Source: Octopus bimaculoides
Taxonomy: Eukaryota
Direction of reading: 5' to 3'
Length of the DNA stretch: 64,000 nucleotides
Assembly (NCBI RefSeq): GCF_001194135.2
Contig: NC_068990.1
Coordinates: 19,031,946-19,095,945 of the forward strand
Of this stretch, positions 121 through 61,047 are shown piece by piece. The notes beneath the pieces are model-generated. The model ran no database searches, had not been told where the DNA came from, and worked only from the letters and a program-made list of their open reading frames with translations. Within the stretch, counting starts at the first letter, position 1, and each line of letters opens with the position of its first letter. The position numbers were made by a program, and so were the translations under genes.

Positions 121-744
121 TCTACAAATATGTTACGTACAACGTAGAAGAGTTTTTGCAGCTAATTGTCTTAACAATCTGAGCAAGTATTTTCCCTATA
201 GTTCCCGTTGACCTCCCCACCGCACCCATACGCACACTGTCCTGAAAGTTTTATATGTTGTCCTTTATATGAAACTTAGAAAATATTCAAAATTATTAAA
301 GTAGCCATTGACACTATAGAATCGCATTGTTTACTTCTATTCAAATAATTTGTTGTTTATGCTCTACATATATTCTTTTCTTTCTGAGTTTAACTATAAC
401 CTTTATGTTATTTTGCATCGCTACATCCATTTCCCTTGCTATAACAACTCATATTTAATTCACCAATATAAACACCGTGGTTTCATGATCTGCTTTTACA
501 TTATAATCAAAATGCATCCTATTTCTGAGCTGTCCTAATACTTCAGAATAAAATGTTTTGGAATATATGTTCATTAGTGAACCGTGCCTAGGTATAAAAC
601 GAAATGGCCACATACCGTAATGATCTTGATCTGAAGTCTATTTGATCACGGCTGACTTCATATAAAACAACAAAAAAATTTCAGAATCCTGAAATACTTA
701 TATCTTCTATAGGCCTGACATTTTGGAAAATTACAGCGACCTCA

Positions 745-822
745 TCGGTTACCTAGTACTTAATTTATCGACCCCAAAATGGTAAAAGCAGAGTCTACTT
801 CGACGGTATTTGAAGTCAAGCT
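745..822 (-). mobile_element. Degenerate fragment of tRNA-derived SINE (family 1)
   Basis: agtacttaatttatcgacccc...agagtctacttcgacggtatttgaagtcaag matches the reverse complement of the central part of the copies at 18535 and 22351. Confidence 0.6.
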
Positions 823-4182: not shown

Positions 4183-4444
4183 AACATATACATACATTCA
4201 TACANNNNNNNNNNNNNNNNNNNNNNNNNNNNNNNNNNNNNNNNNNNNNNNNNNNNNNNNNNNNNNNNNNNNNNNNNNNNNNNNNNNNNNNNNNNNNNNN
4301 NNNNNNNNNNNNNNNNNNNNNNNNNNNNNNNNNNNNNNNNNNNNNNNNNNNNNNNNNNNNNNNNNNNNNNNNNNNNNNNNNNNNNNNNNNNNNNNNNNNN
4401 NATAATAGGTAAATAAATGGGGTTGAACGCAGATCTTATTCAAA

Positions 4445-4543
4445 TTCTTTTACTTTCAACATGTTTCGAAGACAACATTGGTTTTATTCCAAAGGAATAG
4501 ACGGTGAAAATAATGTAATCTTCTCATCAGGAAAGAAAAAGAA
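4445..4543 (-). ncRNA. Minimal type I hammerhead ribozyme in the inverted pLTR
   Basis: Minus strand: uucuuuuucuuuc CUGAUGA GAAGA[46 nt]UCUUC GAAAC AU GUU gaaaguaaaagaa. Stem I 13 bp with one mismatch, stem II 5 bp. Confidence 0.75.
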
Positions 4544-4865
4544 ACAATCTCAACAACAAGTTATTATAACAATTTTGATGACTGCATAAATGATAAACAG
4601 AACGCTATTAAGTATTTTAAAAATAACCGTTTGTAGATCTGACGTCAAAGGTAGACCATAAGAAGAGAAGGGGTAAAAAAATAATAAGTAGAGAACAAGG
4701 AGGAATAAAGGAGAAATATAGAGTGATATGTTGGTTGAAAAAAGTTCCAAGACTTGGAAGATTTCTCTATTGAAGTAGAGTGCAAGCCCATTTTTTCACT
4801 CTAGAGGTAATTCACTGTTCGTTAGAGATAGTACCACTTACAAGTTCACTGGGGATGGCAAAACT

Positions 4866-5116
4866 AATTGGTTTGTTATTCTGTATGGAAGGCAAATTAA
4901 ATCTAATCTTCCTTTGCAGTTACGTGAAGCGGTTAGTAAGAATTTTCCCAAATTTTTTTACATATTATTCAGTTATTTATTCTCATATAGTTAGAGTTGC
5001 CTTCTCCAACACAAAGAATCTTTCACCAATTATAACTTCTCATAATACCAGTCTGCTAAATAAAAGTTCATTTACTCAGAGTTCCAACATTAATTTAGTT
5101 AATACCAGCCCTTCCC

Positions 5117-5168
<52 letters not shown>

Positions 5169-5611
5169 CAACATAGTTTTGGTCTTTGAGGGCAACCCCA
5201 ACAGAATTAAATTTATGTCTAATAATTCTAAGATTAAGAATTCTATATACCAATGTAAAATTACTTCCCGTACCGATGCCTATTTCTATATTGGCGCTTC
5301 CTCTTCCCAGTTATCTAAGAGAATTTCCAATCATAATTCATTATTCTTCATTTAGGGATAATAGTAAACGCAATTGCACAGGGCTTAGTAAACTGGTTTG
5401 GTTTCTTAAAGACAACAATAAAGATTTTAATTTATATTGGTTCATCCTGCCCATCTCTTTCCCTTATGACACGGGCAAAGGATTCTGTAACATTTGCAAT
5501 TCTGAACTCTTCCATATTCTCTTCTCTAAGAATCACCTTGATAACACGCTTATAGAGCGATCTAACAAATGTAAGCATTGGCAGAAACATACCTTTAGCT
5601 CATATAAGTGA
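4866..5611 (+). pseudogene. Frameshifted PLE RT-EN linker plus GIY-YIG endonuclease, with an in-frame (AAT)n poly-Asn tract
   Basis: SIY at 5242-5250, YIG at 5287-5295, CxxC and CxH near the C-terminus. Frameshifts near 4955 and 5345. Combines track ORFs 4780..5355 and 5186..5611. Confidence 0.85.
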
Positions 5612-5880
5612 TTTATTCCAGTCTGTATAGTTTCAAGATTTAGTTCACCTTGCATTCTACTTCAATAGAGAAATCTACTTCCAAGCCTTTGAACATTTTT
5701 TCAACCAACATATCACTCTATATTTCTCCTTGTTCATTACTTATTATTTCTTTCCCCCTTCTCTTCCTATGGTCTACCTTTGACGTCCGATCTACTAAGG
5801 GTTATTTTAAAAATACTTAATAGCGTTCTCTTTATGCAGTCATCAAAATTGTTATAATGACTTGTTGTTGAGATTGGTTC

Positions 5881-5971
5881 TCTTTCTTTCCTGGTGAGAA
5901 AATTCAATTAAGTTACACCGTTTATTTCTTTGGAATAAAACCAATGTTGTCTTCGAAACATATGTCGAAGG
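5881..5971 (+). ncRNA. Minimal type I hammerhead ribozyme in the 3' pLTR (core mutated to CUGGUGA)
   Basis: cuuuc CUGGUGA GAAAA...UCUUC GAAAC AUAU GUC gaagg; palindromic ACAUAUGU in place of stem III. Confidence 0.7.
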
Positions 5972-6756
5972 TAAACGGATTTGAATAACATCTGCGTTCA
6001 ACTCCATTTATTTACTTAAACTATACAAATTACCGCATATTAACCCGGAGTTATATATATATATATATATATATGACATTGAAACTGTAGACCAGATTCT
6101 ACCATACAACTTCGCTTCCCTTCTTGTTGTGTTCATGAAAATTTGTGCGCTTCTATATGTAATGTATTCTTTCATTTGAACCATATGATTTTAACGTAGT
6201 ATTGTAATAATGAGGAGATCTGTTAAAAGATATCACCTTAGAGATTTTACGGCAAATGTGTTTCCTGGTGTATGGAAGAATGAATAATTATACACATGCA
6301 AGGAATGTTAAAATGAATAAATGAAAGACAGGGGAAAGGAAGGCTGGATAGCAAATATATGTGAATAACTGTTAGCGCTGCTGGAAATAATGTTAAATGC
6401 TTTGTCATGAGTGATCCTCTTGATAATTTCCTCTGTTGCCCTACGAGTGAAAAATCGTTTTATGTACACGTATCCAGGCATTATCTTCAATTTAGATTTG
6501 GTTTCTGTTTCCTATTAAAATAGCCTTCGGCAATCTTGGTTTTAACTGCTGAGATTATCTGATCCGTATAACTCCAATCCCTGTATCCTTCTTACTTCTA
6601 GCGCATTTTGCTTGTATCATAAGTATTGGAAAACCCTGCACTTGGAGCAGTCAATAATCCACATACAGTTGCCGTTTAGTTTATCTGATGCAGCGGTCAT
6701 ACGCACACCTAGCCATGCATACAGACAGGCATATCTACCTATCTATCTACCGATCT

Positions 6757-8420: not shown

Positions 8421-9645
8421 TGTAAATACTTTCTCTTTGTTTCAGTCAGTAGGCAATGGTTAGGCAATGGCACTATCTTGTAAGCTTTGCTTCAATAAAT
8501 CAACCCCGCTACTGATTTTAATTGTGATGCTTTCTCTCGCCCTACCACGTTGTCGAGCATCTAGTCGATGGAGGCATGAATAAGTAAAAACTTGTTCTAG
8601 CAGACAAACATAGTGTCACATTCATGCAGAACATGTACCAACACTGCATATATTAAGAGACAACAGATGTACTCAATACGCTTACAATTTCAGTAATATG
8701 AGCATTTCATATTTTAACATCCCAAAGTGATTAAACTTTTGACCCTAATGCCAACACAGAAATTTTCGAACAATTTTTTTCTACTACGTAAAGAAAGGAG
8801 TGGCAGCTGTTTTTATTTCTCTCAGACGTACGAGGTGTTCCTCATGCGGTTCTTTAGCTCTCATTCACAATTTGTTTTTATATTTTCGTTTACTTGTGGC
8901 AGATATTTAGCGTGGATTGTTTAGGATAAATCTATGTATGTCGTTGGCTAGGTTAGGTCAACGTGTGGTCTGAAGATAAGTAAATGCGTCCACTTGTGAT
9001 TGTAAAAAGTAATGAATTGTTTGAATGATGTGAGTAGATGTACGTCAGTGAAACAAGCATGAAATTTTGCTAGTAAAATTCTAGATCGTTTTAGCGTAAA
9101 CTTTCTTGTTATTACAGATTGTATTTGGATGTCTCGTCTGGTGAATGAAACTGAAGAATATTTAGGACGGTAAAGAGAATGTCACTTTGAATTAATGGTA
9201 TTTTCTTGTAAGCTATTTTTGTAAATTATATGTGGGTGGGGTGTTTGTAATATAGGGTTAGGTTTCAACCTGACAGGTGTATATACGAATGCATATATCA
9301 ATACATGCTTACACTCAAGATATACACATAGAGCGTTACAAACAAATATGTATATAAGTTGATTGATACAGACTGTCAGTGGCCGCAGCGCGTGCCTTCG
9401 CTTTAGCAGCTATGGGATGCCATGCACGTTTTCTAGCCGGCGCTGGCAAATTAGATCTCCTGACCAGTGAAATTTGTCCTTTCCCCAAAGTGCGGAAAAT
9501 TAAACGCTCTAGTTTGGCCAAACGTGGATTGGGGACAGGGTAAGTTATTTGGGAGACAATGTGAGCAGTCACCACATCTGCTTTATCTTTCAGAGATAAT
9601 GATAACAGCAACAATGATAATAATGCTCCATTATCTGTCTGCTAT

Positions 9646-9760
9646 AGGCACAAGGCCTCATATTTTGGGGGTGAGGTAGCTTGTCTATTACATCGTTCCA
9701 AGTGCAGAACTGCTACTTATTTTATTTACCCCGAAAGGAAAAAAGGCAACATCGACCCCC
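9646..9760 (-). mobile_element. Degenerate 3' half of SINE family 1
   Basis: aggcacaaggcct...tacttattttatttaccccgaaagg...aaggcaacatcgacc resembles the reverse complement of the 18535 copy. Confidence 0.65.
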
Positions 9761-18285: not shown

Positions 18286-18534
18286 AATTCACTTGCAGAA
18301 ATGCTTTAACCGGGTAAAATATTGTTTTGAAAACAGCCACTTATGATATTATTATCCATGCAAATATACTGATTGTATGCTTTCATCACCCAAGAACGAA
18401 GCGTAATAATGCCAAAAATTGCAGCAAAAACAAAAATTGGCGCCTTTATCAATGATTAGAAATAATTGGCCGAAATCAGGCCTTATGACCTCATAAAAAA
18501 GAGACATTTTGTAATTAGTATATGATTGGATTAA

Positions 18535-18752
18535 GGCGGCGAGCTGGTAGAAACGTTAGCACGCCGGTCGAAATGCTTAGCGGTATTTCGTCTGTCTTTA
18601 CATTCCGAGTTCAAATTCTACCGAGGTCGACTTCGCCTTTCATCCTTTCGGCGTCAATAAATTAAGTACCAGTTGCGTACTGGGGTCGATCTAATTGTAT
18701 GCCCCCCCCTCCCCGACAATTTCGGGCCTTGTGTGTAGTGTAAAAAAGAATA
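18535..18752 (+). mobile_element. Full-length tRNA-derived SINE family 1 (octopus OK/OR-type; name from memory)
   Basis: ggcggcgagctggtagaaacgttagc head, B-box GTTCAAATTC at 18609-18618, 3' gggccttgtg...aaaagaatat. Multiple homologous copies in this window. Confidence 0.9.
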
Positions 18753-18765
18753 TTTGACTGGATTA

Positions 18766-18990
18766 ATGCTGCGAACTGGCGGAATTGTTAGCATGTCGGG
18801 CAAAATGCTTTGCGGCATTTAATCCGTCTTTGCGTTCTAAGTTCAAAATCCTCCGCGGTCGAGTGTACCTTTCATTTTTTTAGAAGTAGATAAAATAAGT
18901 ACCAATTGGGTACTGGGGTCGATGAAATCGATCTACATTCTCCCCACCCCCGAATTATTGGTCCTGTTTCAAACTTTGAAACCAATATAT
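18766..18990 (+). mobile_element. Older, diverged SINE family 1 copy directly in tandem
   Basis: Colinear with the 18535 copy (gaactggcggaattgttagc, gttcaaaatcc, tactggggtcgat) but with a different tail (tttgaaaccaatat). Confidence 0.85.
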
Positions 18991-19281
18991 ATGGCTGGAT
19001 GCCACTGGCAAGACTGGAGGATCCTAGCTAGAACATTTTTGAACATATGTCTGACTAATCAAAAGATGACTTGCTGCCAACGAAAACCCAAATGAGCAGA
19101 GACGCCTACACTATGTCGATCCACCAGTTAGTAACAGAAGCCAAGTATCCTTCAATAACCTAATTTATCGTTTTGTAGAATGAAGAACATAGTATATAAT
19201 CAGCGTCCAAGATTGACTGGATATGTTTGGAACACAGTTTCCAATATGTTTGCTCGATTATATTCGATACCGTTTGTTATT

Positions 19282-19635
19282 AAATTTGGCACAAAGTCCA
19301 CAATTTTGAGGTGAAAGGCACAAATTGATTACATCGATTCCAGTATTTGAGTGGCACTTATTGAATCCGAAGTGAGGAAATGTCAAGTCAACCACAGCGG
19401 AATTTGAATTGAGAACGTAAAGAACCGCAGCAAATTACTTTAAGCATTTGGTCAGTTCACTGGCTTATGGAGTTAAAAACAAAGGGCTTCTAGTTTTGGC
19501 ACAAGCACAGCAATTTTAGGGGATGAGGATATGTAGATTACATCAAACCAAGTGTTCAACTGCTACATGATATATATTTTATCGTCCCCCAAATGAATAA
19601 TAGGCAAAGTCAACTTCGACGGAATTTGAGTTCAC
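19282..19635 (-). mobile_element. Two highly diverged SINE family 1 copies in tandem (about 19282-19460 and 19493-19635)
   Basis: Each has (t)ttggcacaa..gattacatc..tcaa..cggaatttga, the reverse complement of the tail-to-B-box segment. Confidence 0.65.
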
Positions 19636-22350: not shown

Positions 22351-22656
22351 GGCGACGATCTGGCAGAGACGTTAGCACGCCGGGCGAACGTTGCATACTG
22401 GATTCGATCTAATCGATTGGCCCCTTCCCAAAAATTTGGAGCCCTGTGCCTAGAGTAGAAAAGAGACGTTAGCACACCGGGCGAGTTGCTTAGCGGTGTT
22501 TCGCCTGTCTTCACGCTCTGAGTTCAAATTCCGCCGTGGTCGACTTTGCCTTCCATCATTTCGGGGTCGATAAATTAGGTACCAGTTGCGTACTGGGGTC
22601 GATCTAATCGGCTGGCGTCCTCCCCAATTTTGGGCCTTGTGCCTAGAGTAGAAAAG
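22351..22656 (+). mobile_element. Composite SINE family 1: internally deleted copy fused to a 5'-clipped copy, inside a single 18-bp TSD
   Basis: TSD gatat(t/a)gtagaaatcaaa at 22333-22350 and 22657-22674. Head plus tail 22351-22464, second unit 22465-22656. Confidence 0.9.
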
Positions 22657-23871
22657 GATATAGTAGAAATCAAACAAATGAGTCCAATATTGCTTATTTT
22701 TTAACCTGAGTGAAATACAATAATAGCGATTTGTTAATAGAAATAATTCAATTAAGAATTAACGTGCTTAGTATTTTGATTCAGTTCACACCGAATGTAA
22801 ATATTCCTGGTATTTTTATGTCTAAGAACGCGTATAACTATGAATACACCAAGTTAAACACAACAGTCTTTAATCTCTCCTAAAATATTTTTGCTCGTGC
22901 AAGGTTGTAACTTTGAAATATTATATGAAAATTTAGTATTATGTACTGAGTATAAGGTTGCAAGCGATTACAAGTGAAATGTCTGAGTTGGATTCCAATC
23001 TCAGAGGAATAAACTTTTATTCGCTTACACCACAAGCGTTCTTAGAGGGACAATAAAGTTGATAGATCTTTATTTTCATTCTCTTCAGAATATAAGATTT
23101 TAGATCCAGAGAAGAGTGCTAGAGTGAAAACAGATGACGCCAATATTGATTTTTATTGCTATTCTGCTGTATTATTCCATTGTATAATTTCAACTAGATT
23201 TACACATCTAACATTAATATTTACTGTATTCTGGACGTAGAACAAAGGGTCATGTATAAAAGAGAGGGGAATAACTTCGTTGTAAGATGTATAAGTTTGA
23301 GAATTATACTTTTTATTACGATGATGCAAAATGACCACAGACTAAAATCGAACCAGACTCAGAAAATGTATTGTTACTTGGTCCTTAAATACAGCATTCG
23401 ATATCTAGCCAAAGAGTTATTGATTCATACAGAAGTTGGAGACAGTCTTTTGTTGAGAAAGATTAACTGCCTGCAACTATATTTCGATAAGAAAATTTAT
23501 CAACAGTCATGATGTGAAATGTAAAATCAGTCTCAATGAATTCTGAAGATTGCTATCTTAGGTACAAATTTTGATGTTGCTAAGATATTCAATTCAAAAT
23601 ATCAGACACAACTTTCAGCTAATAAATCGAATATTTTTGTCTGATATTAAAATGGAAAGATATAATTTTGAGTCAGACATCGACTCATACGTAACTACGT
23701 GTGAGAATGTATATATATATATATAATCATACACACATGTACATATGAATATACACATTTATATACATATATATGTGTGTGTATACATATATATACATAT
23801 TTGTATACATATACATATATACGTAAATATATGTATATACACAGCTATATATTTACACACGCACACACACG

Positions 23872-40049: not shown

Positions 40050-40745
40050 AAATTATGAATGTAATAGCATCATCATCATCATCATCATCATCATTATTGT
40101 CTTGTTATTTTGTTTGTTGTTATTGTAATATACGACTTGACTCTGGTTTGGTCTTATTCTTGGTTGAATTCATGTGTAGCTTTTACTAATCTTATATAGC
40201 CTTGGGTACCTACAAGCTTTCAATAATCTTTGAGGTGCTTTCAATAATCCTGATATTTCCTGTTCCTAAAAGGCAAACATTCTGTAAAAGCTCTACAGGG
40301 CATTCCATTCCAGTCCTCTTCAACTATTTTCCTATATCATTACAATGTTTTTTTTTTAAACCACTCACTCGAATTTTGCAGTTATGATTGCGCTTATATT
40401 TCCTTTGTGCAAGGAAACTGCACTCACTGAAAATTTGATTGATACTCCCGTCTCCTTTCCTACAGATTCTTGATTTGCGGTCTGACTGAGTTTTGTCGAT
40501 CTTTCTCTTTGTATAATTTGTTGTAAGAGTTTGTTCTTGAGAGGCTATAATTAGCGTCCATGTCTCTCGTTTCAAATTCCTGAGCAGCAAAGAAATCCAG
40601 TGATCTTTAATTCCAACATTCCCAGTTTGTTGCACGAATTGACCATGTAGTTCCATTTCTTTCTGTTTCTTTATTGTTTCAGTCTCTCTATTCTCTTTGA
40701 ATTGTTCTACTGTTTCCATCACGGTTTGGGTATTTCTGGATTTAG
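40050..40745 (-). mobile_element. 3' end of an R4/Dong-clade non-LTR retrotransposon, nuclease region deleted, with (AAT)/(GAT)n tail
   Basis: ELHGQF..LKRET..LIIASQEQTLTTNY..IDK..K(S)RIC..SINQIFSECSFLAQRKYKRNHN (degenerate CCHC region), then ELLQNVCLLGT C-terminus and a trinucleotide tail. Confidence 0.85.
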
Positions 40746-41578
40746 AAAGTATTTTTCTTTACACTCAACAACATATCACAATACTAACAGTGCCGTCTGC
40801 GTTTATTAATTTATGCAAGTAAATTTTAAAAAGAAATTAGTTCAGAAATGACAAAAAAAGAACACGGAGTATGTGAGGACCAATGTGATTATAAAATTTA
40901 CATCTGTTATTAAACATACTTGAGTATATATTGCAGTAACTTTGGTGTACACTTTTGCTAGTCTGAGTAATATTATAAGATATGGCTTACATAACAAAAT
41001 TGATACTTGTATCAAATTTCTTGATACAAAATGATGAAATGAATTCTAATTTTCGAACAAACAATATTTATTACTTCAGAATTAGATTAAATTAAATATT
41101 TTTTTCGTTTTTTATATTTGCAATAGATATATGTTATTATTGTTTTTTTTTTGTTTAGTTTTTTTGTCCATTTTTTCAATTTGATTAGCATAGTAGAAAT
41201 CTTGTCCATTGAAAACATCTGCAATATTTCAGTAGAAGTGTATTTTTGGAACGTTATCATTGCCTGCAGCTCAAACTATTATATACAACCATGCTGCACG
41301 ATGTATATTAACTGTCTCTGTAGCTCTTTTGTACTCTCTGTTTTGCCCACTGCCTAATGCATGATTAGAGAAATTAACAAACCAACGATACACAAAATCC
41401 AATGATGGACGAACATTATTTGCTTACGCCATTCATTTTTATAGTTAAATGAATAGGCTTATAGATAAGGTTTTGATTATCTGCGGACGGACACACACAC
41501 AAACACATAAACACACGCATACACACACATGCACACATAAACACACAAACACACACAGGAAAATGTTTGTGAAATATG

Positions 41579-46851: not shown

Positions 46852-48260
46852 AGTTTGTATGTTTATTTATGTTTGTGTGTGTGTGTGTGTGTCTATTTGA
46901 GAAGGTGTCATTACATTTTGCATTGTGTTTCTTAATTATAAAAACAAAACAACACCGTTGTCTTCTATGTCCCTTGGAGTGCTTGAGCGTTATTTGTGGT
47001 AGATCGAATAATATCATCGAAATTTCCATCGAGTTTGAATTTTCTTCTATCTAAAGTTCCTTCATGTGAAAGTGCGACAGTAAATTAATGAGTTCCGTTA
47101 TAAATTTCCCTAGATGTGCTCCGTGAGTATTGCAAAGTATTCGAATATAAAGTTTCTTATGCATTTGTGTTGTCGTTAATTTTCTTTTCTCTATGATTCG
47201 ATGATATATGTTGAGATAGAGAGAACAATAAATAAGAAAATTCTAATGAAAAATCTGAATTTATAACCTCTGAGTGGCTGAACTAATGGTGTTGGCTTTC
47301 CAGCGTCTTGATTTAACAATTAGCGAATAGGACATTTTCTCCAGAGACAACACTTCAGCATTCTCTATAAATACCTATTTCACAAACGGTTTTAAATAGA
47401 CAACAAAACTCTTAAACAATACCCGTACGAATCGAAAATACGTTGCAATCACGTCCATAAAATACAACATCCACGTTAATCAAGTCAAATATAGCATAAT
47501 GTTCTATGCTTTACGTATATGGATTAGAAAGGCCTAGTCTAAGTGCTACATGTAGTTTACAAATATGAGTAATAAAGAATATACGATTTGTAAGACGTAA
47601 ATACGGAATCAATGTTTATTTCCAAGATATTTGTCTGTTATTTATTCCCCATGTTTAACCATATAAAAATCATTGTTGCAATTATTGCTGACGTCTGAAA
47701 TTTATACACGTCGACGACTCAAGTAATTTTTAGAAGGACAATACATTTCCGATACGTTCTAACAATCTAAACTTTATTATGAAAAATATTAAACGTATAC
47801 TTCATCATAATAGCGCTAGGTGTTCGGACAGCTGTCAACATTTACTTATATTGTCTGTGCAGTAAAAAGGGAAAGTACACACTAAAATAAGAAAATAAAC
47901 CACACAAAATATTTGAAAAATATCGACATCGACATTCGAGTCCTAACTGTTATAAAAAGGAAATCAGACAATGATCTGTCTTGGTGAAGGTGATGGTGTT
48001 AATTGCAGTGATTTCATACATTGGCACAATGTAATACATTTATAGGGAACGACTACTGTCAATTACATAGAGACTTGTGTATTATTTATAAGCGATTTTA
48101 TAACCCCACAGGGGAGAATGATAAATGAATGAATTTGAACAGAAATAATAGTACGTTATTAGATTGTCACAAGGCCAAAAACTAGATCTATTTTATTGAG
48201 AGCTCAAAACTAGTTATTTTTTTTTACATATTTTCTATCCACTGGCACAAGGCCTATACT

Positions 48261-48458
48261 ACTGGCACAAGGCCTGCATTATAGATTGGGGAGGAGGCAT
48301 CGACCCCAGTATTTCACTGGTACTTATCTTATCGACCCCGGAAGGATGAAAGGTAACATCGACTTCGGCTGAATCTGAACTCAGAACGTAATAACGGATA
48401 AAATATGGATAAGCATTTTGCGCAGCGTGATAACGATTCTGCCAGCTTACCAACTTAA
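48261..48458 (-). mobile_element. SINE family 1 copy with a 20-bp tandem duplication at its tail (48241-48275)
   Basis: ggcacaaggcct..catcgaccccagta..ctgaactcagaacgta..taacgattctgccagct..ttaa. Confidence 0.85.
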
Positions 48459-48768
48459 TTAGGTGCCTTAATTCTGAACGTCCTGACACGTTGATCAGAA
48501 GATCCACCGTACCTCCAGATATAGGATATTCCTAAACGATGAGCCAGCTCACATGACTTGGGAAGATCCATAAGAAAAAACCCACATCTCATAATTGCCT
48601 AATCGTACAAGTGTCGGGTGTCTATATTGCTCTTCGGTGATTATCGCTTACGAAGTCATTTTGCTATCAAATGGTTTTGAAAATAGTTCAGTGATATTTG
48701 AAACGGGACTGTAAATACAAGTAACTAAACATCGCAATGAATGTTCTATATTTTAGAGATGAATTCTG

Positions 48769-49279: not shown

Positions 49280-49856
49280 ATTAACTTCTTGTGCTTAGAA
49301 CAATAGTAGTTATGGTAATTGATCTTAAGTAAATACATAATTACCTTTCTGCAGCCCACGCTATTATACAACTCAGCTTCCAGCATCTCCCCAAACACAC
49401 ACACACGTATCTAAAACATTTTTTTCTGTTTTGGCTTACAGCAAAACAAAAAAAAAAAAAAGAAACACCAAAGCAAAACACATTTAAAATGACGTTTTAT
49501 GTAAATGACTGTCAGTGTTTACTCTAGCAAGTAAATGACAATGATTAAATCTATATAATCCTGAATCGGACATTCCAACTATTTAATGATGTCGGTCGTC
49601 TTTTATTGCTTTCAAAGCTAAAGATGAAAGACATCTATAATTCGAATAAGAGAGGAAGTAAATCCTACTTTGTGTAATTTTACGGCACAATATATTTTCG
49701 TTCAAATGTCAGCCTTAGGATAGTTTTGGAATTAATTACTGGAATATCATGAACACAATTACGAAGGAGTACATACAACAAAGTTGAATGGTAGGAGCCA
49801 CGATTTTATTTCAGAAATATCTACAAAATATGCCATGTGGCGCGTTACTACATCTA

Positions 49857-50040
49857 CTGCTGCTGCTGCTGCTGTTACTACTACTACTACTACTACTGAT
49901 ACTACTACCTCCCACTTCCTCCCTTTTCCTCTCTCTACCACTCCTCGTTGATCACATGTGACCTGTGGACACCTCTTCCTTTCTCCATTCGGCCAGCTTG
50001 AAGGCAAGACGAACTACTGTCTCTCTCCGTTCAGGTTCGT
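49857..50040 (+). promoter_or_regulatory. Possible promoter or short first exon: (CTG)n(CTA)n, pyrimidine-rich tract, CACTTCC, E-box TCACATGTGA, then CAG|GTTCGT at 50035
   Basis: Motifs are seen, but there is no transcript evidence and the motifs are short. Confidence 0.2.
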
Positions 50041-53238: not shown

Positions 53239-53348
53239 CATTGTTTAGTTATTGAGTAAACCAACAGGTACATCTTCCGAGGACAGATAAATATATGTTA
53301 TATTTACAAGTTAATCTACACGAGATTTAAGGTGAACTTCAATAAATA

Positions 53349-53470
53349 TTAGCACACCGGAAAAATACTTAGCGGCATTCCTTTGTCTTTTTACTCTTAG
53401 TTCAAATTCCGCCGAGGTCGACTTTACTTTTCATCCTTTCTGCGTCAACAATTATCGTACTCTCTCCCCC
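53349..53470 (+). mobile_element. Partial SINE family 1 copy
   Basis: ttagcacaccgg..cttagcggcatt..gttcaaattccgccgaggtcgactttacttttcatcc. Confidence 0.8.
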
Positions 53471-54809: not shown

Positions 54810-57504
54810 NNNNNNNNNNNNNNNNNNNNNNNNNNNNNNNNNNNNNNNNNNNNNNNNNNNNNNNNNNNNNNNNNNNNNNNNNNNNNNNNNNNNNNNNNNN
54901 NNNNNNNNNNNNNNNNNNNNNNNNNNNNNNNNNNNNNNNNNNNNNNNNNNNNNNNNNNNNNNNNNNNNNNNNNNTATATATAGGCAAATACTTGTACTGG
55001 CGTACCTCTGCATCTGTCACAATATATGAAATGTGTATTTTGTGATCCACGGTGTATGATATTTTATTTGATTCGATATCAGCTTTATCTATCAGTTTTG
55101 TGTGGGTTTTATAGTATCGCAATGACATGTACAATCCTGTATTTGCTAACATAAATCAATATATTGTTTTATACTCCTATACTCTAGGGTCTGTTAGATT
55201 CCATGTTATTTTCAACAAATATTGATGTACACGTATATACACAAATTCATACACGCACGCACAATCACACAGGTGCATATATCCTTCTCGTTACAAATAT
55301 ATGCATATGTTTCTATTTTATATATAAATCATCGTGTTTCTGTATTTCATACATTATCATACTTCTCCCTTCTCACACAAATATCGACTGTATGCATTCA
55401 TACATATTATATATATAATTTTCTCCTTACACATACATAAGAATATATTCTCTTCATAATACACAGAGAGAGAAAGAGAGAGAGAGAGACAAGGAAGTAC
55501 ATGCACGCATATACACATATACATGCGTAGTTACACACACAAACCAAAATCACTATCTTGAATCTCTCATGCATACGAGCACACATCTATACACACACAT
55601 ACACACACACACATTCACATCTTCGTGATAGTTTAGTTTGTATTTTTAAACGAGGAAGAATATGTAAAACATAAAATAGTTTGTATATATATATTTTATG
55701 TGAAGTTTAAACTTAATAAAGCATAAATCTAAACTTTACGTTACTGACTCTTTAAACCAGCGAAGTAGGTAAATGACACGAAATTACGCATGAACAATAA
55801 TTTGAAAGACGTCAAACTACAATTACATCACTATACATTGTGATTTGATTGGTTGGCGAAAAAGCATTTCAAATCATACCGCATTAATCTGTTCAACTCG
55901 ATATGCAGGATACAGCTATAACTATAATGTTTTCAGTCATTCATACATATAAATACATCTAAGCCCGCGAGCTGGGTATTATTAAGAAGGTTTTATTGTT
56001 TATTTATGTGAAAATTTGATTTCTGTTTATATGACTATTAATAATGCATAGTAACTCAATGCTGTTGGATATAAGTGATTCTCATCACTGCTAGGGCGTT
56101 GCTAGCATCCCCCAACACATAGATGCATGTACAATTTCATTGGTTCATATTTTAAAGCAAAATTTGAAAACAGTGACTATAAAATGTCATCTTAGTCGAG
56201 AGGAATGTATCACATTTGTTAATGGAGGACTATTGTAGGATCACTTGTGAATTACAAAGGCTCGACTTACTTCAGTTTTATAATCAGCATCCTTTAAAAT
56301 CCAGTTGTATTTTGATACCGAAGAGGTAATATGCTTTTCTGAATGTCAAACTATACCTTGTCGCAAGGATTTATTTTCAAAAGGATTTGTCAGTTAATGC
56401 ATATTAGTGTTTTTTTTTTGTTTTTTTTTTAATATTTAATCTATTTTGAAATAGATCGTTTGGATGGAGTGATTATTTTAAAGGAGGAAAAAAATGAACC
56501 AATTACTAATGTTTTCACTTTATAATTCCAACTGAAACAACGAAATCGTTAGAGCCAGAGTGGCTCAAATTGGCTAATTTTATATCTTATTATAAATATG
56601 GCCTATAAGTAAATATTTATGCGTATATTATAAAAATTTCTTGGAATCCCATGTACGGACGTTTATGCTATAAGGAGGTTTATAACATTGAGTTAATATA
56701 TTGTTTAGTTTTACCTTCGTGAATATCACTGCAGTTCTGTATATATTGCTTTCTTGGTTGGAAGTGACTGAATTGTACTGTCTTATTGCCAGGATGAATT
56801 AACTACTTCTTATCAAAGAATCAGCTGGGTATACGCATAGTAATGTTACTAGCGGCTGTTTGAAAGAATATTGGAGGGAAGCGGTCAGGTTTTATGTATT
56901 GCTGTAGGCGCCATAAGAGAAGAGATCTTATTACACAAAACTATGCTTGGAACATATAAATTACATGCTACCAGAAATAAGCTTTCTCACATCAGTATGG
57001 ATATTATTTTATGTGTTATTAATTTCCGATTGATTAATGTTATCTTCTCTCTGTTTTACTTTATAACTAAGATTTTGGTTCTTCTTCGAAAAATAAGCGA
57101 CCCATTTTAATACAAGTAGCCATTCACCTACTAAATGGTTCATTACATTCATTTCGATTATATTCATGTATAGCACAATTGCTTTAATATTAGAAAACTT
57201 CACCATGGCATAATTATGAATCGTTAAATAATAATTTTTGGAAGTTTGACATTTGTTTAAAGATAGCAATAATTAAAACCAAGATGGAATTCTACTCTTT
57301 TCTTCATAGAACGCTAGTGGACTATAAACTGAGAGTAAGAAGAGTAATTTCTTAGTATTCGTATACAAAATATACATAGTTATTCCTGGAAAATCACCTT
57401 TCTAAAAATGTCTTGTGAAACGAATAAATCCAGTTGTTGCTACAAGCAACTAACTAAACAAGCCAACTTTCCGTATATTACGTCAGAAATAAATTAGTCA
57501 CAAA

Positions 57505-58830: not shown

Positions 58831-59114
58831 GTCGCGTTTTTAATTTTTTTTCTTGTTTGTTCTTGTTTAAATTGATTATATGTATACACACACACACACA
58901 CATATATACGTCTGCGTATGTGAGTGCGCGAACGTGTATATATATATATATATATATATTGATTTTCGTAAATATTTTATTGAGTTATAAACTTATAAAC
59001 AGACGTGTATTTACGCCTACCCATATGGACACGTACTCATATATCTGTCCTGCCAGATTTTGAAATGTAATAAATGTATACAAAAATGATAATTTTTATA
59101 TTCCCTCTAAAAAG

Positions 59115-59222
59115 ACTTCTTTTGTTATATTTTATTCAATTTTTCTTTTATTTTATTTATTTCAGGTAAGTTTTAAAACCCATAATTTCATTCGTGACAC
59201 AGACATATTTGCTCAGGTAAGT
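59115..59222 (+). promoter_or_regulatory. Candidate recursive splice site (poly-Y, CAG|GTAAGT) with a 51-nt RS-exon (59166-59216) ending in CAG|GTAAGT
   Basis: About 50 nt AG-free, U-rich tract; ttcag 59161-59165; gtaagt 59166-59171; second cag|gtaagt at 59214-59222. Phase-0 frame is open (VSFKTHNFIRDTDIFAQ). Confidence 0.55.
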
Positions 59223-59648
59223 TAGTTTGAAATACCGTTCGATTTATCGACATCAACAATCTATATTAAAATATAAATATTCTACTAAAGTGATTTCTAA
59301 ATGTTTACAACCAGAGAATTGCATTAAGGAATAGGTGTCACAGACGATGACTCAAATTGTGATTGAAGTGTTTTTTTCTTGTCTATAGGCACTTTATTTT
59401 GGTTACTATTGGTTGCAATGAGGAAGAAATATTGTATGATTGTAAAAATTTATTGAAAGCAATATTGAAAACTTTTTAAAAGCATTTCACTTAGAATAAC
59501 ACTTTGGCTTTAGGCAACGATTAATAACATGAATGAATATTATGATGCAATGTTGAAATACATAAGTATCTACAGAAGTCAAAGCAACCTATACAATCGC
59601 AATACCCTGGATTATAAATTTCTCGTAAACGAACATTCATGTCTGTGG

Positions 59649-60080: not shown

Positions 60081-61047
60081 NNNNNNNNNNNNNNNNNNNN
60101 NNNNNNNNNNNNNNNNNNNNNNNNNNNNNNNNNNNNNNNNNNNNNNNNNNNNNNNNNNNNNNNNNNNNNNNNNNNNNNNNNNNNNNNNNNNNNNNNNNNN
60201 NNNNNNNNNNNNNNNNNNNNNNNNNNNNNNNNNNNNNNNNNNNNNNNNNNNNNNNNNNNNNNNNNNNNNNNNNNNNNNNNNNNNNNNNNNNNNNNNNNNN
60301 NNNNNNNNNNNNNNNNNNNNNNNNNNNNNNNNNNNNNNNNNNNNNNNNNNNNNNNNNNNNNNNNNNNNNNNNNNNNNNNNNNNNNNNNNNNNNNNNNNNN
60401 NNNNNNNNNNNNNNNNNNNNNNNNNNNNNNNNNNNNNNNNNNNNNNNNNNNNNNNNNNNNNNNNNNNNNNNNNNNNNNNNNNNNNNNNNNNNNNNNNNNN
60501 NNNNNNNNNNNNNNNNNNNNNNNNNNNNNNNNNNNNNNNNNNNNNNNNNNNNNNNNNNNNNNNNNNNNNNNNNNNNNNNNNNNNNNNNNNNNNNNNNNNN
60601 NNNNNNNNNNNNNNNNNNNNNNNNNNNNNNNNNNNNNNNNNNNNNNNNNNNNNNNNNNNNNNNNNNNNNNNNNNNNNNNNNNNNNNNNNNNNNNNNNNNN
60701 NNNNNNNNNNNNNNNNNNNNNNNNNNNNNNNNNNNNNNNNNNNNNNNNNNNNNNNNNNNNNNNNNNNNNNNNNNNNNNNNNNNNNNNNNNNNNNNNNNNN
60801 NNNNNNNNNNNNNNNNNNNNNNNNNNNNNNNNNNNNNNNNNNNNNNNNNNNNNNNNNNNNNNNNNNNNNNNNNNNNNNNNNNNNNNNNNNNNNNNNNNNN
60901 NNNNNNNNNNNNNNNNNNNNNNNNNNNNNNNNNNNNNNNNNNNNNNNNNNNNNNNNNNNNNNNNNNNNNNNNNNNNNNNNNNNNNNNNNNNNNNNNNNNN
61001 NNNNNNNNTATATATATATATATATATATGATTACATATATAAGGAT

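What the first reader, a model, noticed from the sequence alone, without database searches (positions are those of the whole stretch)
59115..59222. Candidate recursive splice site with a 51-nt RS-exon, a possible mollusc ratchet point
Seen: the strongest splice signal in 64 kb. About 50 nt with no AG and almost only U/A runs into TTCAG, which is immediately followed by a perfect donor GTAAGT. A second perfect CAG|GTAAGT lies exactly 51 nt downstream. The enclosed segment is open only in phase 0 (VSFKTHNFIRDTDIFAQ); the other two phases hit TAA at once. Known: acceptor-donor AG|GT ratchet points followed by a short cryptic exon define recursive splicing in long Drosophila and vertebrate introns. 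Inference: this is a recursive site, or a switchable microexon, in a giant + strand intron. I am not aware of recursive splicing having been mapped in cephalopods. Alternative: the two donors share weak downstream similarity (caggtaagtt..aaa.cc...gaca..aca..tatt), so they may come from an old tandem duplication of a donor.
Basis: partly seen in the sequence, partly recalled or inferred. Interest (0 to 1): 0.78.

Follow-up and report, generated by a model that had tools for sequence, protein, structure and literature searches.

The report
Candidate recursive splice site with microexon
A strong splice acceptor fused to a perfect splice donor, with a second perfect donor 51 bases later, really is in the sequence and is very unlikely to be chance, so it looks like a stepwise ("recursive") splicing site of the fly and vertebrate kind; whether it is transcribed or used could not be tested.

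Summary
At 59115-59163 a 49-nt AG-free, T-rich tract (T34 A9 C5 G1) runs into TTTCAG (AG 59164-59165). GTAAGT follows at once (59166-59171). A second CAG|GTAAGT has its GT at 59217, exactly 51 nt downstream. These are the only two (C)AGGTAAGT on either strand of the window. They sit inside an exact 11-mer, TCAGGTAAGTT. A same-strand pair within 150 nt is expected about 1e-4 times per window. The locus is single copy in the window. It is not a tandem duplication (flanks z = -0.05), not a U1 snRNA relic and not structured RNA. Every defining feature of a ratchet point with an RS-exon that sequence alone can test is met. The rest could not be tested: no exon or host gene was found, no protein holds the 17-aa segment, and no orthologous DNA or RNA data were reachable. 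The organism is also unverified. The two donors are equally strong and the segment is 3n and open in phase 0. If used, it is therefore more likely a switchable RS microexon (Ubx m1/m2 type, also 51 nt) than a silent zero-nucleotide ratchet. Verdict: a well-founded but unproven candidate, and a new member of a known kind.

The parts
59115..59163 (+). AG-free, T-rich pyrimidine tract of the candidate 3' splice site. It holds branch-point-like TTTAT motifs with the A at 59134 (31 nt before the AG) and at 59150 (15 nt before).
   Evidence: 49 nt without AG, T34 A9 C5 G1, 86% pyrimidine in -25..-4, top 8 of 2701 YAG sites. The branch points are inferred from the yUnAy consensus only.
59164..59165 (+). 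Acceptor AG (context TTTCAG).
   Evidence: It is the first AG after the AG at 59113-59114.
59166..59171 (+). GTAAGT directly after the acceptor. This is the intronic half of a donor that would be regenerated once an upstream exon is joined here (the ratchet-point donor).
   Evidence: one of only two AGGTAAGT in the window, tied best donor score (12.9 bits).
59166..59216 (+). 51-nt candidate RS-exon or microexon. It is 3n long, open only in phase 0 (VSFKTHNFIRDTDIFAQ), and 33% GC.
   Evidence: No protein match. Among exon-like AG...GT open segments in the window it has the best pair of splice sites.
59214..59222 (+). Second donor CAG|GTAAGT (GT at 59217), the donor of the RS-exon. It is not itself a credible acceptor, because an AG lies 13 nt upstream and the pyrimidine content there is low.
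   Evidence: The exact 11-mer TCAGGTAAGTT is shared with 59162-59172.

Best explanation
A recursive-splicing unit of the RS-exon type on the + strand.

Proposed mechanism (inferred, not shown):
1. U2AF and U2 bind the T-rich tract and the AG at 59165. U1 binds the donor at 59217. Together they define the 51-nt segment as an exon.
2. An upstream exon is joined to 59166. That junction regenerates a donor, NNN|GTAAGT.
3. In a second step one of two donors is used. If the regenerated donor is used, the 51 nt leave with the downstream intron and no trace stays in the mRNA (the ratchet outcome). If the donor at 59217 is used, 17 codons are added.

The intronic halves of the two donors are identical (GTAAGTT), and the segment is 3n and open in phase 0. 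I therefore expect a regulated choice, as with the 51-nt Ubx m1/m2 RS microexons, rather than an always-silent zero-nucleotide ratchet. After an upstream exon that ends in phase 1 or 2, inclusion would meet TAA at once, and the segment would then have to be skipped.

Shown: the sequence architecture, its rarity, and that it is neither a repeat nor a duplication. Inferred: transcription, use of the sites, and the outcome.
For: - Juxtaposed acceptor and donor TTTCAG|GTAAGT behind a 49-nt AG-free T-rich tract.
- A second perfect CAG|GTAAGT 51 nt downstream. These are the only two such 9-mers on either strand.
- A same-strand pair this close is expected about 1e-4 times per window, and roughly 1-7 times in a genome assumed for scale to be 2.7 Gb (the size is my assumption, not a measurement), before the acceptor is required.
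- The combined AG|GT score is the best in the window.
- It has the best-flanked exon-like open segment in the window.
- The asymmetry is right: only the first site has an acceptor tract.
- The region is single copy in the window, with no flank similarity and no period-51 array.
- Published definition: a tandem acceptor-donor pair plus a short cryptic exon of about 50 nt with its own donor. Ubx m1 and m2 are 51 nt (PMC8605326). The RS-exon is defined first and its fate is settled by donor competition (PMC6224609).
Against: - There is no evidence that the + strand is transcribed.
- No coding exon or host gene was detected in 57 kb of non-gap sequence.
- There is no strand bias in base skew, poly(A) signals or U1-type sites.
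- No protein holds the 17-aa segment. This is a weak negative: isoforms are collapsed into clusters, a 17-aa match is near the noise, and no window-derived query matched anything, so I could not show that the collection holds proteins of this organism at all.
- Conservation is unknown.
- In flies and mammals the ratchet-point donor is usually stronger than the RS-exon donor, and cryptic RS-exons are usually out of frame. Neither holds clearly here.
- The 51 nt are no more GC-rich than their surroundings (33% against 28-30%) and their amino-acid composition is not protein-like (log-odds -1.7).
Confidence: 0.45

Rival explanations
1. An inert pseudo-exon. The DNA is intergenic, or antisense to its gene, or a decayed relic of a once-used exon. 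The motifs are there but are never seen by the spliceosome.
For: - No gene, exon or transcription signal was found anywhere in the window.
- The window is repeat-rich, gap-rich, AT-rich DNA with retroelement relics.
- The segment is not protein-like and matches no protein.
- A first-stage scan picks the most striking motif of each window, so there is a selection effect.
Against: - The pair is expected only about 1e-4 times per window, and far less once the acceptor tract (top 0.3% of YAG sites) is also required.
- A decaying relic would not keep two perfect 9-mers inside an exact 11-mer while the sequence between and around them shows no similarity.
Confidence: 0.27
2. An ordinary 51-nt cassette or constitutive microexon of a coding or non-coding + strand transcript. 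The GTAAGT at its 5' end is not used, for example because the exon junction complex represses it. There would then be no recursive step.
For: - The length is 3n, phase 0 is open and both splice sites are strong.
- In deuterostomes most exons that regenerate a donor are simply included, because the EJC represses the regenerated site (PMC6224609).
Against: - An exon that happens to start with a perfect GTAAGT is rare. At the window's base composition the hexamer is expected in about 3e-4 of random positions (my arithmetic).
- A very strong regenerated donor escapes repression in the tested cases.
- No UGC motif lies upstream of the acceptor, as would be expected for Srrm-dependent neuronal microexons (the motif is from established knowledge).
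- No protein holds the peptide.
Confidence: 0.15
3. A U1-recruiting or decoy element inside a long intron. Two perfect U1 sites and an acceptor engage spliceosome components, for telescripting (suppression of premature polyadenylation) or for intron retention, but do not give productive splicing.
For: - There are two maximal-strength U1 sites 51 nt apart.
- ATTAAA and A-rich signals lie just downstream.
- Decoy exons are a described class (PMC7373989, listed).
Against: - This needs + strand transcription just as the main explanation does.
- A strong acceptor directly fused to the first donor is not needed for U1 recruitment, but it is the hallmark of a ratchet point.
Confidence: 0.06
4. A product of local duplication (an old tandem duplication of a donor, the reader's alternative), or of minus-strand U1 snRNA-derived sequence. 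The complement of CAGGTAAGT is the 5' end of U1.
For: An exact 11-mer is repeated at a 51-nt spacing. On the minus strand both copies read ACTTACCTG.
Against: - The flanks of the two copies are no more similar than shuffles (z = -0.05 and -0.18).
- Tandem Repeats Finder reports no period-51 array.
- Rfam finds no U1 or any other snRNA, even at E <= 10 in a 601-nt search or at gathering thresholds over the whole window.
- No other copy exists in the window.
Confidence: 0.03

Closest known systems
Drosophila intronic ratchet points with cryptic RS-exons (Burnette 2005; Duff 2015; Joseph 2018 and 2021, PMC8605326)
   Same: A pyrimidine tract followed by CAG|GTAAGT, a short segment of about 50 nt, and a downstream donor that allows exon definition. 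All of this is read directly here against the definition.
   Different: - In flies the ratchet donor is usually the stronger one and the cryptic exon is out of frame and unconserved. Here the donors are equal and the segment is 3n and open in phase 0.
- The host intron, conservation and use are unknown here.
- The organism is not an insect.
Ubx m1 and m2, expressed RS microexons of Drosophila (Hatton 1998, as summarised in PMC8605326)
   Same: The same length (51 nt, 17 codons), an exon that starts with a functional donor, and an in-frame inclusion-or-skipping outcome decided by which donor is used.
   Different: - Ubx m1 and m2 are ultraconserved across all 51 nt and lie in a known 73-kb intron of a known gene.
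- Here there is no known gene, no conservation data and no similarity to any protein.
- The equal length may be a coincidence. It also fits the lower size limit for exon definition.
Vertebrate RS-exons (Sibley 2015; Blazquez 2018, PMC6224609)
   Same: The RS-exon is defined first, a donor is regenerated at the exon-exon junction, and the regenerated and downstream donors then compete.
   Different: Vertebrate RS sites mostly have weaker, partial donor motifs and are largely annotated exons kept in the mRNA by EJC repression. This one has a perfect fly-like motif and is in no known protein.
Neuronal microexons dependent on Srrm (eMIC)
   Same: A length of 51 nt or less, frame preservation, and strong flanking splice sites.
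   Different: There is no UGC motif in the 49 nt upstream of the acceptor. No conserved host protein was found. Microexons do not normally start with GTAAGT.

Membership tests
Recursive splice site (ratchet point) with RS-exon | Juxtaposed 3' and 5' splice sites: pyrimidine tract, then (N)CAG|GTAAGT. | tested here: met
   TTTCAG|GTAAGT at 59160-59171. A 49-nt AG-free T-rich tract, 86% pyrimidine in -25..-4. Top 8 of 2701 YAG sites and a top-scoring donor.
Recursive splice site (ratchet point) with RS-exon | A short RS-exon (about 50 nt) closed by its own downstream donor. | tested here: met
   A 51-nt segment closed by CAG|GTAAGT at 59214-59222, set against '~50 nt' in PMC8605326.
Recursive splice site (ratchet point) with RS-exon | Lies on the sense strand of a long intron of a transcribed gene. 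| tested here: inconclusive
   No exon or host gene was detectable in the window. Fourteen candidate ORFs had no protein hit. Pfam gave only weak retroelement hits. There is no strand asymmetry. A speculative + strand first exon at 9412-9539 is unverified.
Recursive splice site (ratchet point) with RS-exon | The regenerated (ratchet) donor is stronger than the RS-exon donor, so the exon is skipped. | tested here: inconclusive
   The intronic halves are identical (GTAAGTT). The exonic half of the regenerated donor depends on an unknown upstream exon.
Recursive splice site (ratchet point) with RS-exon | Cryptic type: the RS-exon is out of frame or carries a stop, and so must be excluded. | tested here: inconclusive
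   The segment is 3n long and open in phase 0. TAA comes at once in phases 1 and 2. The phase of the upstream exon is unknown. As it stands it fits the expressed (Ubx m1/m2) type better.
Recursive splice site (ratchet point) with RS-exon | The acceptor|donor motif is conserved between species. | not testable with these tools
   No related eukaryotic genome could be reached. Exact ORF look-ups were not in the collection. DNA pattern scans of metagenome and prokaryote genome contigs were empty.
Recursive splice site (ratchet point) with RS-exon | RNA evidence: junction reads into the site, sawtooth intronic coverage, and lariats from the regenerated donor. | not testable with these tools
Srrm/eMIC-dependent neuronal microexon | UGC motif close upstream of the acceptor, and an in-frame insertion in a conserved protein. 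| tested here: not met
   There is no TGC in 59115-59163. The peptide matches no protein. The motif requirement is from established knowledge and was not re-derived here.
U1 snRNA gene or pseudogene (minus strand) | A match to the U1 covariance model beyond the 5'-end 9-mer. | tested here: not met
   No U1 match at gathering score in the window, nor at E <= 10 in 58900-59500.
Tandem duplication | Similarity of the two units beyond the shared motif, or an array with a period of 51. | tested here: not met
   z = -0.05 for the 40 nt after each 11-mer and -0.18 for the 50 nt before. TRF finds no such array.

The most novel reading that the evidence does not exclude
This is a working recursive-splicing switch in a lophotrochozoan (if the window is indeed cephalopod). 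It would be an expressed RS microexon with two equal donors that either adds 17 in-frame residues or vanishes without trace. That would place fly-type ratchet points outside insects and vertebrates and suggest that recursive splicing of giant introns is ancestral to bilaterians.
Probability: 0.2. Interest if true: 0.6.

Novelty: new member of a known kind. Interest (0 to 1): 0.4.

Why it matters
Recursive splicing has been mapped in Drosophila and in vertebrates. The cross-species comparison I read covered seven species and no lophotrochozoan (PMC6224609). No paper in the searched library connects recursive splicing with cephalopods or molluscs beyond a passing mention or a reference-list entry.

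Animals with very long introns face the same problem of removing them accurately. A validated fly-type ratchet point in such a lineage would show that the solution is shared or has evolved repeatedly. It would also supply a motif (pyrimidine tract, CAG|GTAAGT, about 50 nt, GTAAGT) for a genome-wide search.

As a single candidate known from sequence only, its present value is as a sharply testable prediction, not as a discovery.

Tried and rejected
1. Tandem duplication of a donor. Rejected: the flanks are no more alike than shuffles and there is no period-51 array.
2. Member of an interspersed repeat. Sensitive blastn of 58980-59520 against the window gave only short AT-rich noise. The window's repeat families lie elsewhere.
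3. U1 snRNA relic on the minus strand. I noticed by eye that the complement starts like U1 and shares TCACGAA and GGTTTT at similar spacing. Rfam finds nothing even at E <= 10, so I treat this as chance.
4. Structured RNA. The fold of 59100-59290 has z = +0.40.
5. Coding exon of a known protein.
   - The 53-aa open frame had no candidate in 5.8 billion clusters.
   - A 30-aa query had 0 hits among 1.84 billion representatives.
6. Finding the host gene.
   - I ranked stop-to-stop ORFs and AG...GT segments.
   - A concatenate of 14 candidate ORFs had no hit at E <= 1.
   - A LINE-like ORF had no hit.
   - Pfam gave only sub-threshold zf-RVT and GIY-YIG matches.
7. Reaching the source genome or orthologues.
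   - Eight exact ORF look-ups were not in the collection.
   - Two metagenome scans and one prokaryote-genome scan for exact 26-27-mers were empty.
8. Strand of transcription from skews, poly(A) signals, U1-type sites and repeat orientation. No asymmetry was found.
9. Other ratchet-like sites in the window. None is comparable.
10. Duff 2015 (PMC4529404) is not held. The fly definition is therefore cited from PMC8605326.

Full report
**What is there.** The sequence is exactly as described. The stretch 59115-59163 is 49 nt without any AG, with composition T34 A9 C5 G1. It ends in TTTCAG, with the AG at 59164-59165, and GTAAGT follows directly at 59166-59171. After 51 nt comes a second CAG|GTAAGT with its GT at 59217. 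Both donors sit inside an exact 11-mer, TCAGGTAAGTT, at 59162-59172 and 59213-59223. The enclosed 51 nt read VSFKTHNFIRDTDIFAQ in phase 0. The other two phases meet TAA at once.

**Is it more than chance?**
- These are the only AGGTAAGT or CAGGTAAGT on either strand of the 64 kb.
- CAGGTAAGT is expected 0.39 times per window from dinucleotide shuffles, and 4 of 100 shuffles gave two or more. Markov models of order 0-3 give 0.15-0.36.
- The count alone is therefore only mildly unusual. The proximity is what matters. A same-strand pair within 20-150 nt is expected 2e-5 to 1.5e-4 times per window. For a genome assumed for scale to be 2.7 Gb (my assumption, not a measurement) that is roughly one to seven pairs, before any acceptor is required.
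- The acceptor is itself in the top 8 of 2701 YAG sites for pyrimidine content, and in the top 3 when the AG-free length is also required.
- With a simple weight matrix the two donors tie as the best in the window, and the combined AG|GT score at 59166 is the highest (17.9 against 15.7 bits).

**What it is not.**
- It is not part of an interspersed repeat. A sensitive search of 58980-59520 against the window found only short AT-rich noise, and the window's repeat families lie elsewhere.
- It is not a detectable tandem duplication. The 40 nt after each 11-mer and the 50 nt before it are no more alike than shuffles (z = -0.05 and -0.18). Tandem Repeats Finder reports no period-51 array.
- I also considered that the minus strand might hold relics of U1 snRNA, since the complement of a perfect donor is the U1 5' end. 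Rfam finds no U1 at gathering score in the window, nor at E <= 10 in a 601-nt search.
- The local RNA is not unusually structured (z = +0.40).
- Only the first site has an acceptor tract. The second has an AG 13 nt upstream and an ordinary base composition. That asymmetry is what an RS-exon needs and is not what a duplicated site would show.

**Context.**
- The window is AT-rich (about 30% GC) draft sequence with 17 runs of N and dense microsatellites.
- It holds copies of a roughly 200-bp interspersed repeat and weak relics of a LINE (zf-RVT, E = 0.043) and of a GIY-YIG element (E = 0.0035).
- I found no convincing protein-coding exon on either strand. ORFs and AG...GT-bounded open segments were ranked by splice-site and amino-acid composition scores. 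A concatenate of the 14 best had no hit at E <= 1.
- In that exon screen the 51-nt segment has the best pair of splice sites in the window. Its amino-acid composition is not protein-like (log-odds -1.7) and its GC content (33%) barely exceeds that of its surroundings.
- No strand asymmetry in skew, poly(A) signals or U1-type sites points to a direction of transcription.
- The open frame that contains the segment matches nothing in 5.8 billion protein clusters. A 30-aa query matches nothing among 1.84 billion representatives.
- These negatives are weak. Isoforms that differ by 17 residues collapse into one cluster, a 17-residue match is near the noise, and the collections may hold little from this organism.
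- The organism itself could not be verified.

**How it most likely works.** Published work defines a recursive site as a tandem acceptor-donor pair. In flies it encloses a short cryptic RS-exon of about 50 nt with its own downstream donor. That exon must be recognised first. After it is joined to the upstream exon, the regenerated donor and the RS-exon donor compete (PMC8605326; PMC6224609). The sequence here meets each of those sequence-level features. I therefore propose the following:
1. The 51 nt are defined as an exon through the acceptor at 59165 and the donor at 59217.
2. An upstream exon is joined to 59166.
3. Either the regenerated NNN|GTAAGT is used and the 51 nt disappear with the rest of the intron, or the donor at 59217 is used and the 51 nt stay.

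Two details differ from the typical fly ratchet point. The intronic halves of the two donors are identical, whereas the ratchet donor is usually the stronger. The segment is also 3n and open in one phase, whereas cryptic RS-exons are usually out of frame. Both details point towards a regulated inclusion-or-skipping switch of the Ubx m1/m2 type. Those two microexons are, perhaps by coincidence, also 51 nt long. If the upstream exon ends in phase 1 or 2, inclusion would hit TAA at once and the segment would have to be skipped. All of this is inference. Nothing here shows transcription or splicing.

**Weighing the explanations.** Chance is a poor explanation for the motif pair, and so are duplication and repeats. 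The real uncertainty is whether the + strand is transcribed in a context where the sites are seen.
- Recursive unit: 0.45.
- Inert pseudo-exon (untranscribed, antisense or relic): 0.27.
- Ordinary microexon whose 5' GTAAGT is not used: 0.15.
- U1-recruiting or decoy element: 0.06.
- Duplication or U1-relic origin: 0.03.

**Novelty and interest.** The mechanism would be a known one in a lineage where, as far as the searchable library shows, it has not been reported. No paper links recursive splicing with octopus. The few papers that hold both 'recursive splicing' and a cephalopod or mollusc term do so only in single passing mentions; for the one I opened, both terms occur only in the reference list. 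It would be a new member of a known kind. It is a clean, cheaply testable candidate rather than a finding, so I score interest at 0.4.

Noticed in passing
window 9370-9640 (+), ORF 9412-9539: A unique CpG-rich island (about 49% GC in a 30% GC window). It holds an ATG in good Kozak context (gcagctATGG) and a 42-codon ORF (MGCHARFLAGAGKLDLL...) that ends exactly at a GTAAGT donor at 9540. It could be a + strand first exon, 49.6 kb upstream of the candidate site. It ends in phase 2, so joining it to 59166 would give an immediate TAA. No protein or Pfam hit. An interspersed-repeat copy abuts it at 9638.
   Followed up: partly
window 730-818, 9638-9757, 18519-19000, 19249-19423, 22390-22661, 48253-48459, 53331-53460: A roughly 200-bp interspersed (SINE-like) repeat family with 65-82% identity between copies. 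It occurs in both orientations and includes a head-to-tail pair at 18.5-19.0 kb. ARAGORN and Rfam find no tRNA in it.
   Followed up: partly
window 4406-6018: A 388-bp inverted repeat (4406-4786 against 6018-5649, 86% identity) brackets ORFs with a sub-threshold GIY-YIG match (PF01541, E = 0.0035). This looks like a relic of a Penelope-like or other GIY-YIG element.
   Followed up: partly
window 40327-40758 (-): A 144-codon open frame with a weak zf-RVT match (E = 0.043) and the look of a LINE ORF2 C-terminus. It has no hit in the protein collection, so it is either old or from a poorly sampled lineage.
   Followed up: partly
window 59389 (+): A second good acceptor (gtgtttttttcttgtctatag|GCAC) lies 172 nt after the donor at 59217. 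If used, it would make a mini-intron, and the frame then stops after 10 codons (ALYFGYYWLQ*). It may be nothing, but it would matter for any RT-PCR design.
   Followed up: no
window 58914-58974 (+): An Rfam mir-297 match far below threshold (30 bits against 90). It is caused by a (TG)n/(TA)n microsatellite hairpin and is a false positive typical of such repeats.
   Followed up: yes
whole window: Seventeen runs of N total 7188 bases (11% of the window), the nearest at 54810-54974 and 60081-61008. The candidate therefore sits in a 5.1-kb ungapped block, and distances to any flanking exon are estimates only.
   Followed up: yes
window 49840-49905 (+): Adjacent trinucleotide runs (GCT)5 and (ACT)7 lie inside the most GC-rich part of the window (48-52 kb, 36-38% GC). 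No coding or promoter evidence was found there.
   Followed up: no
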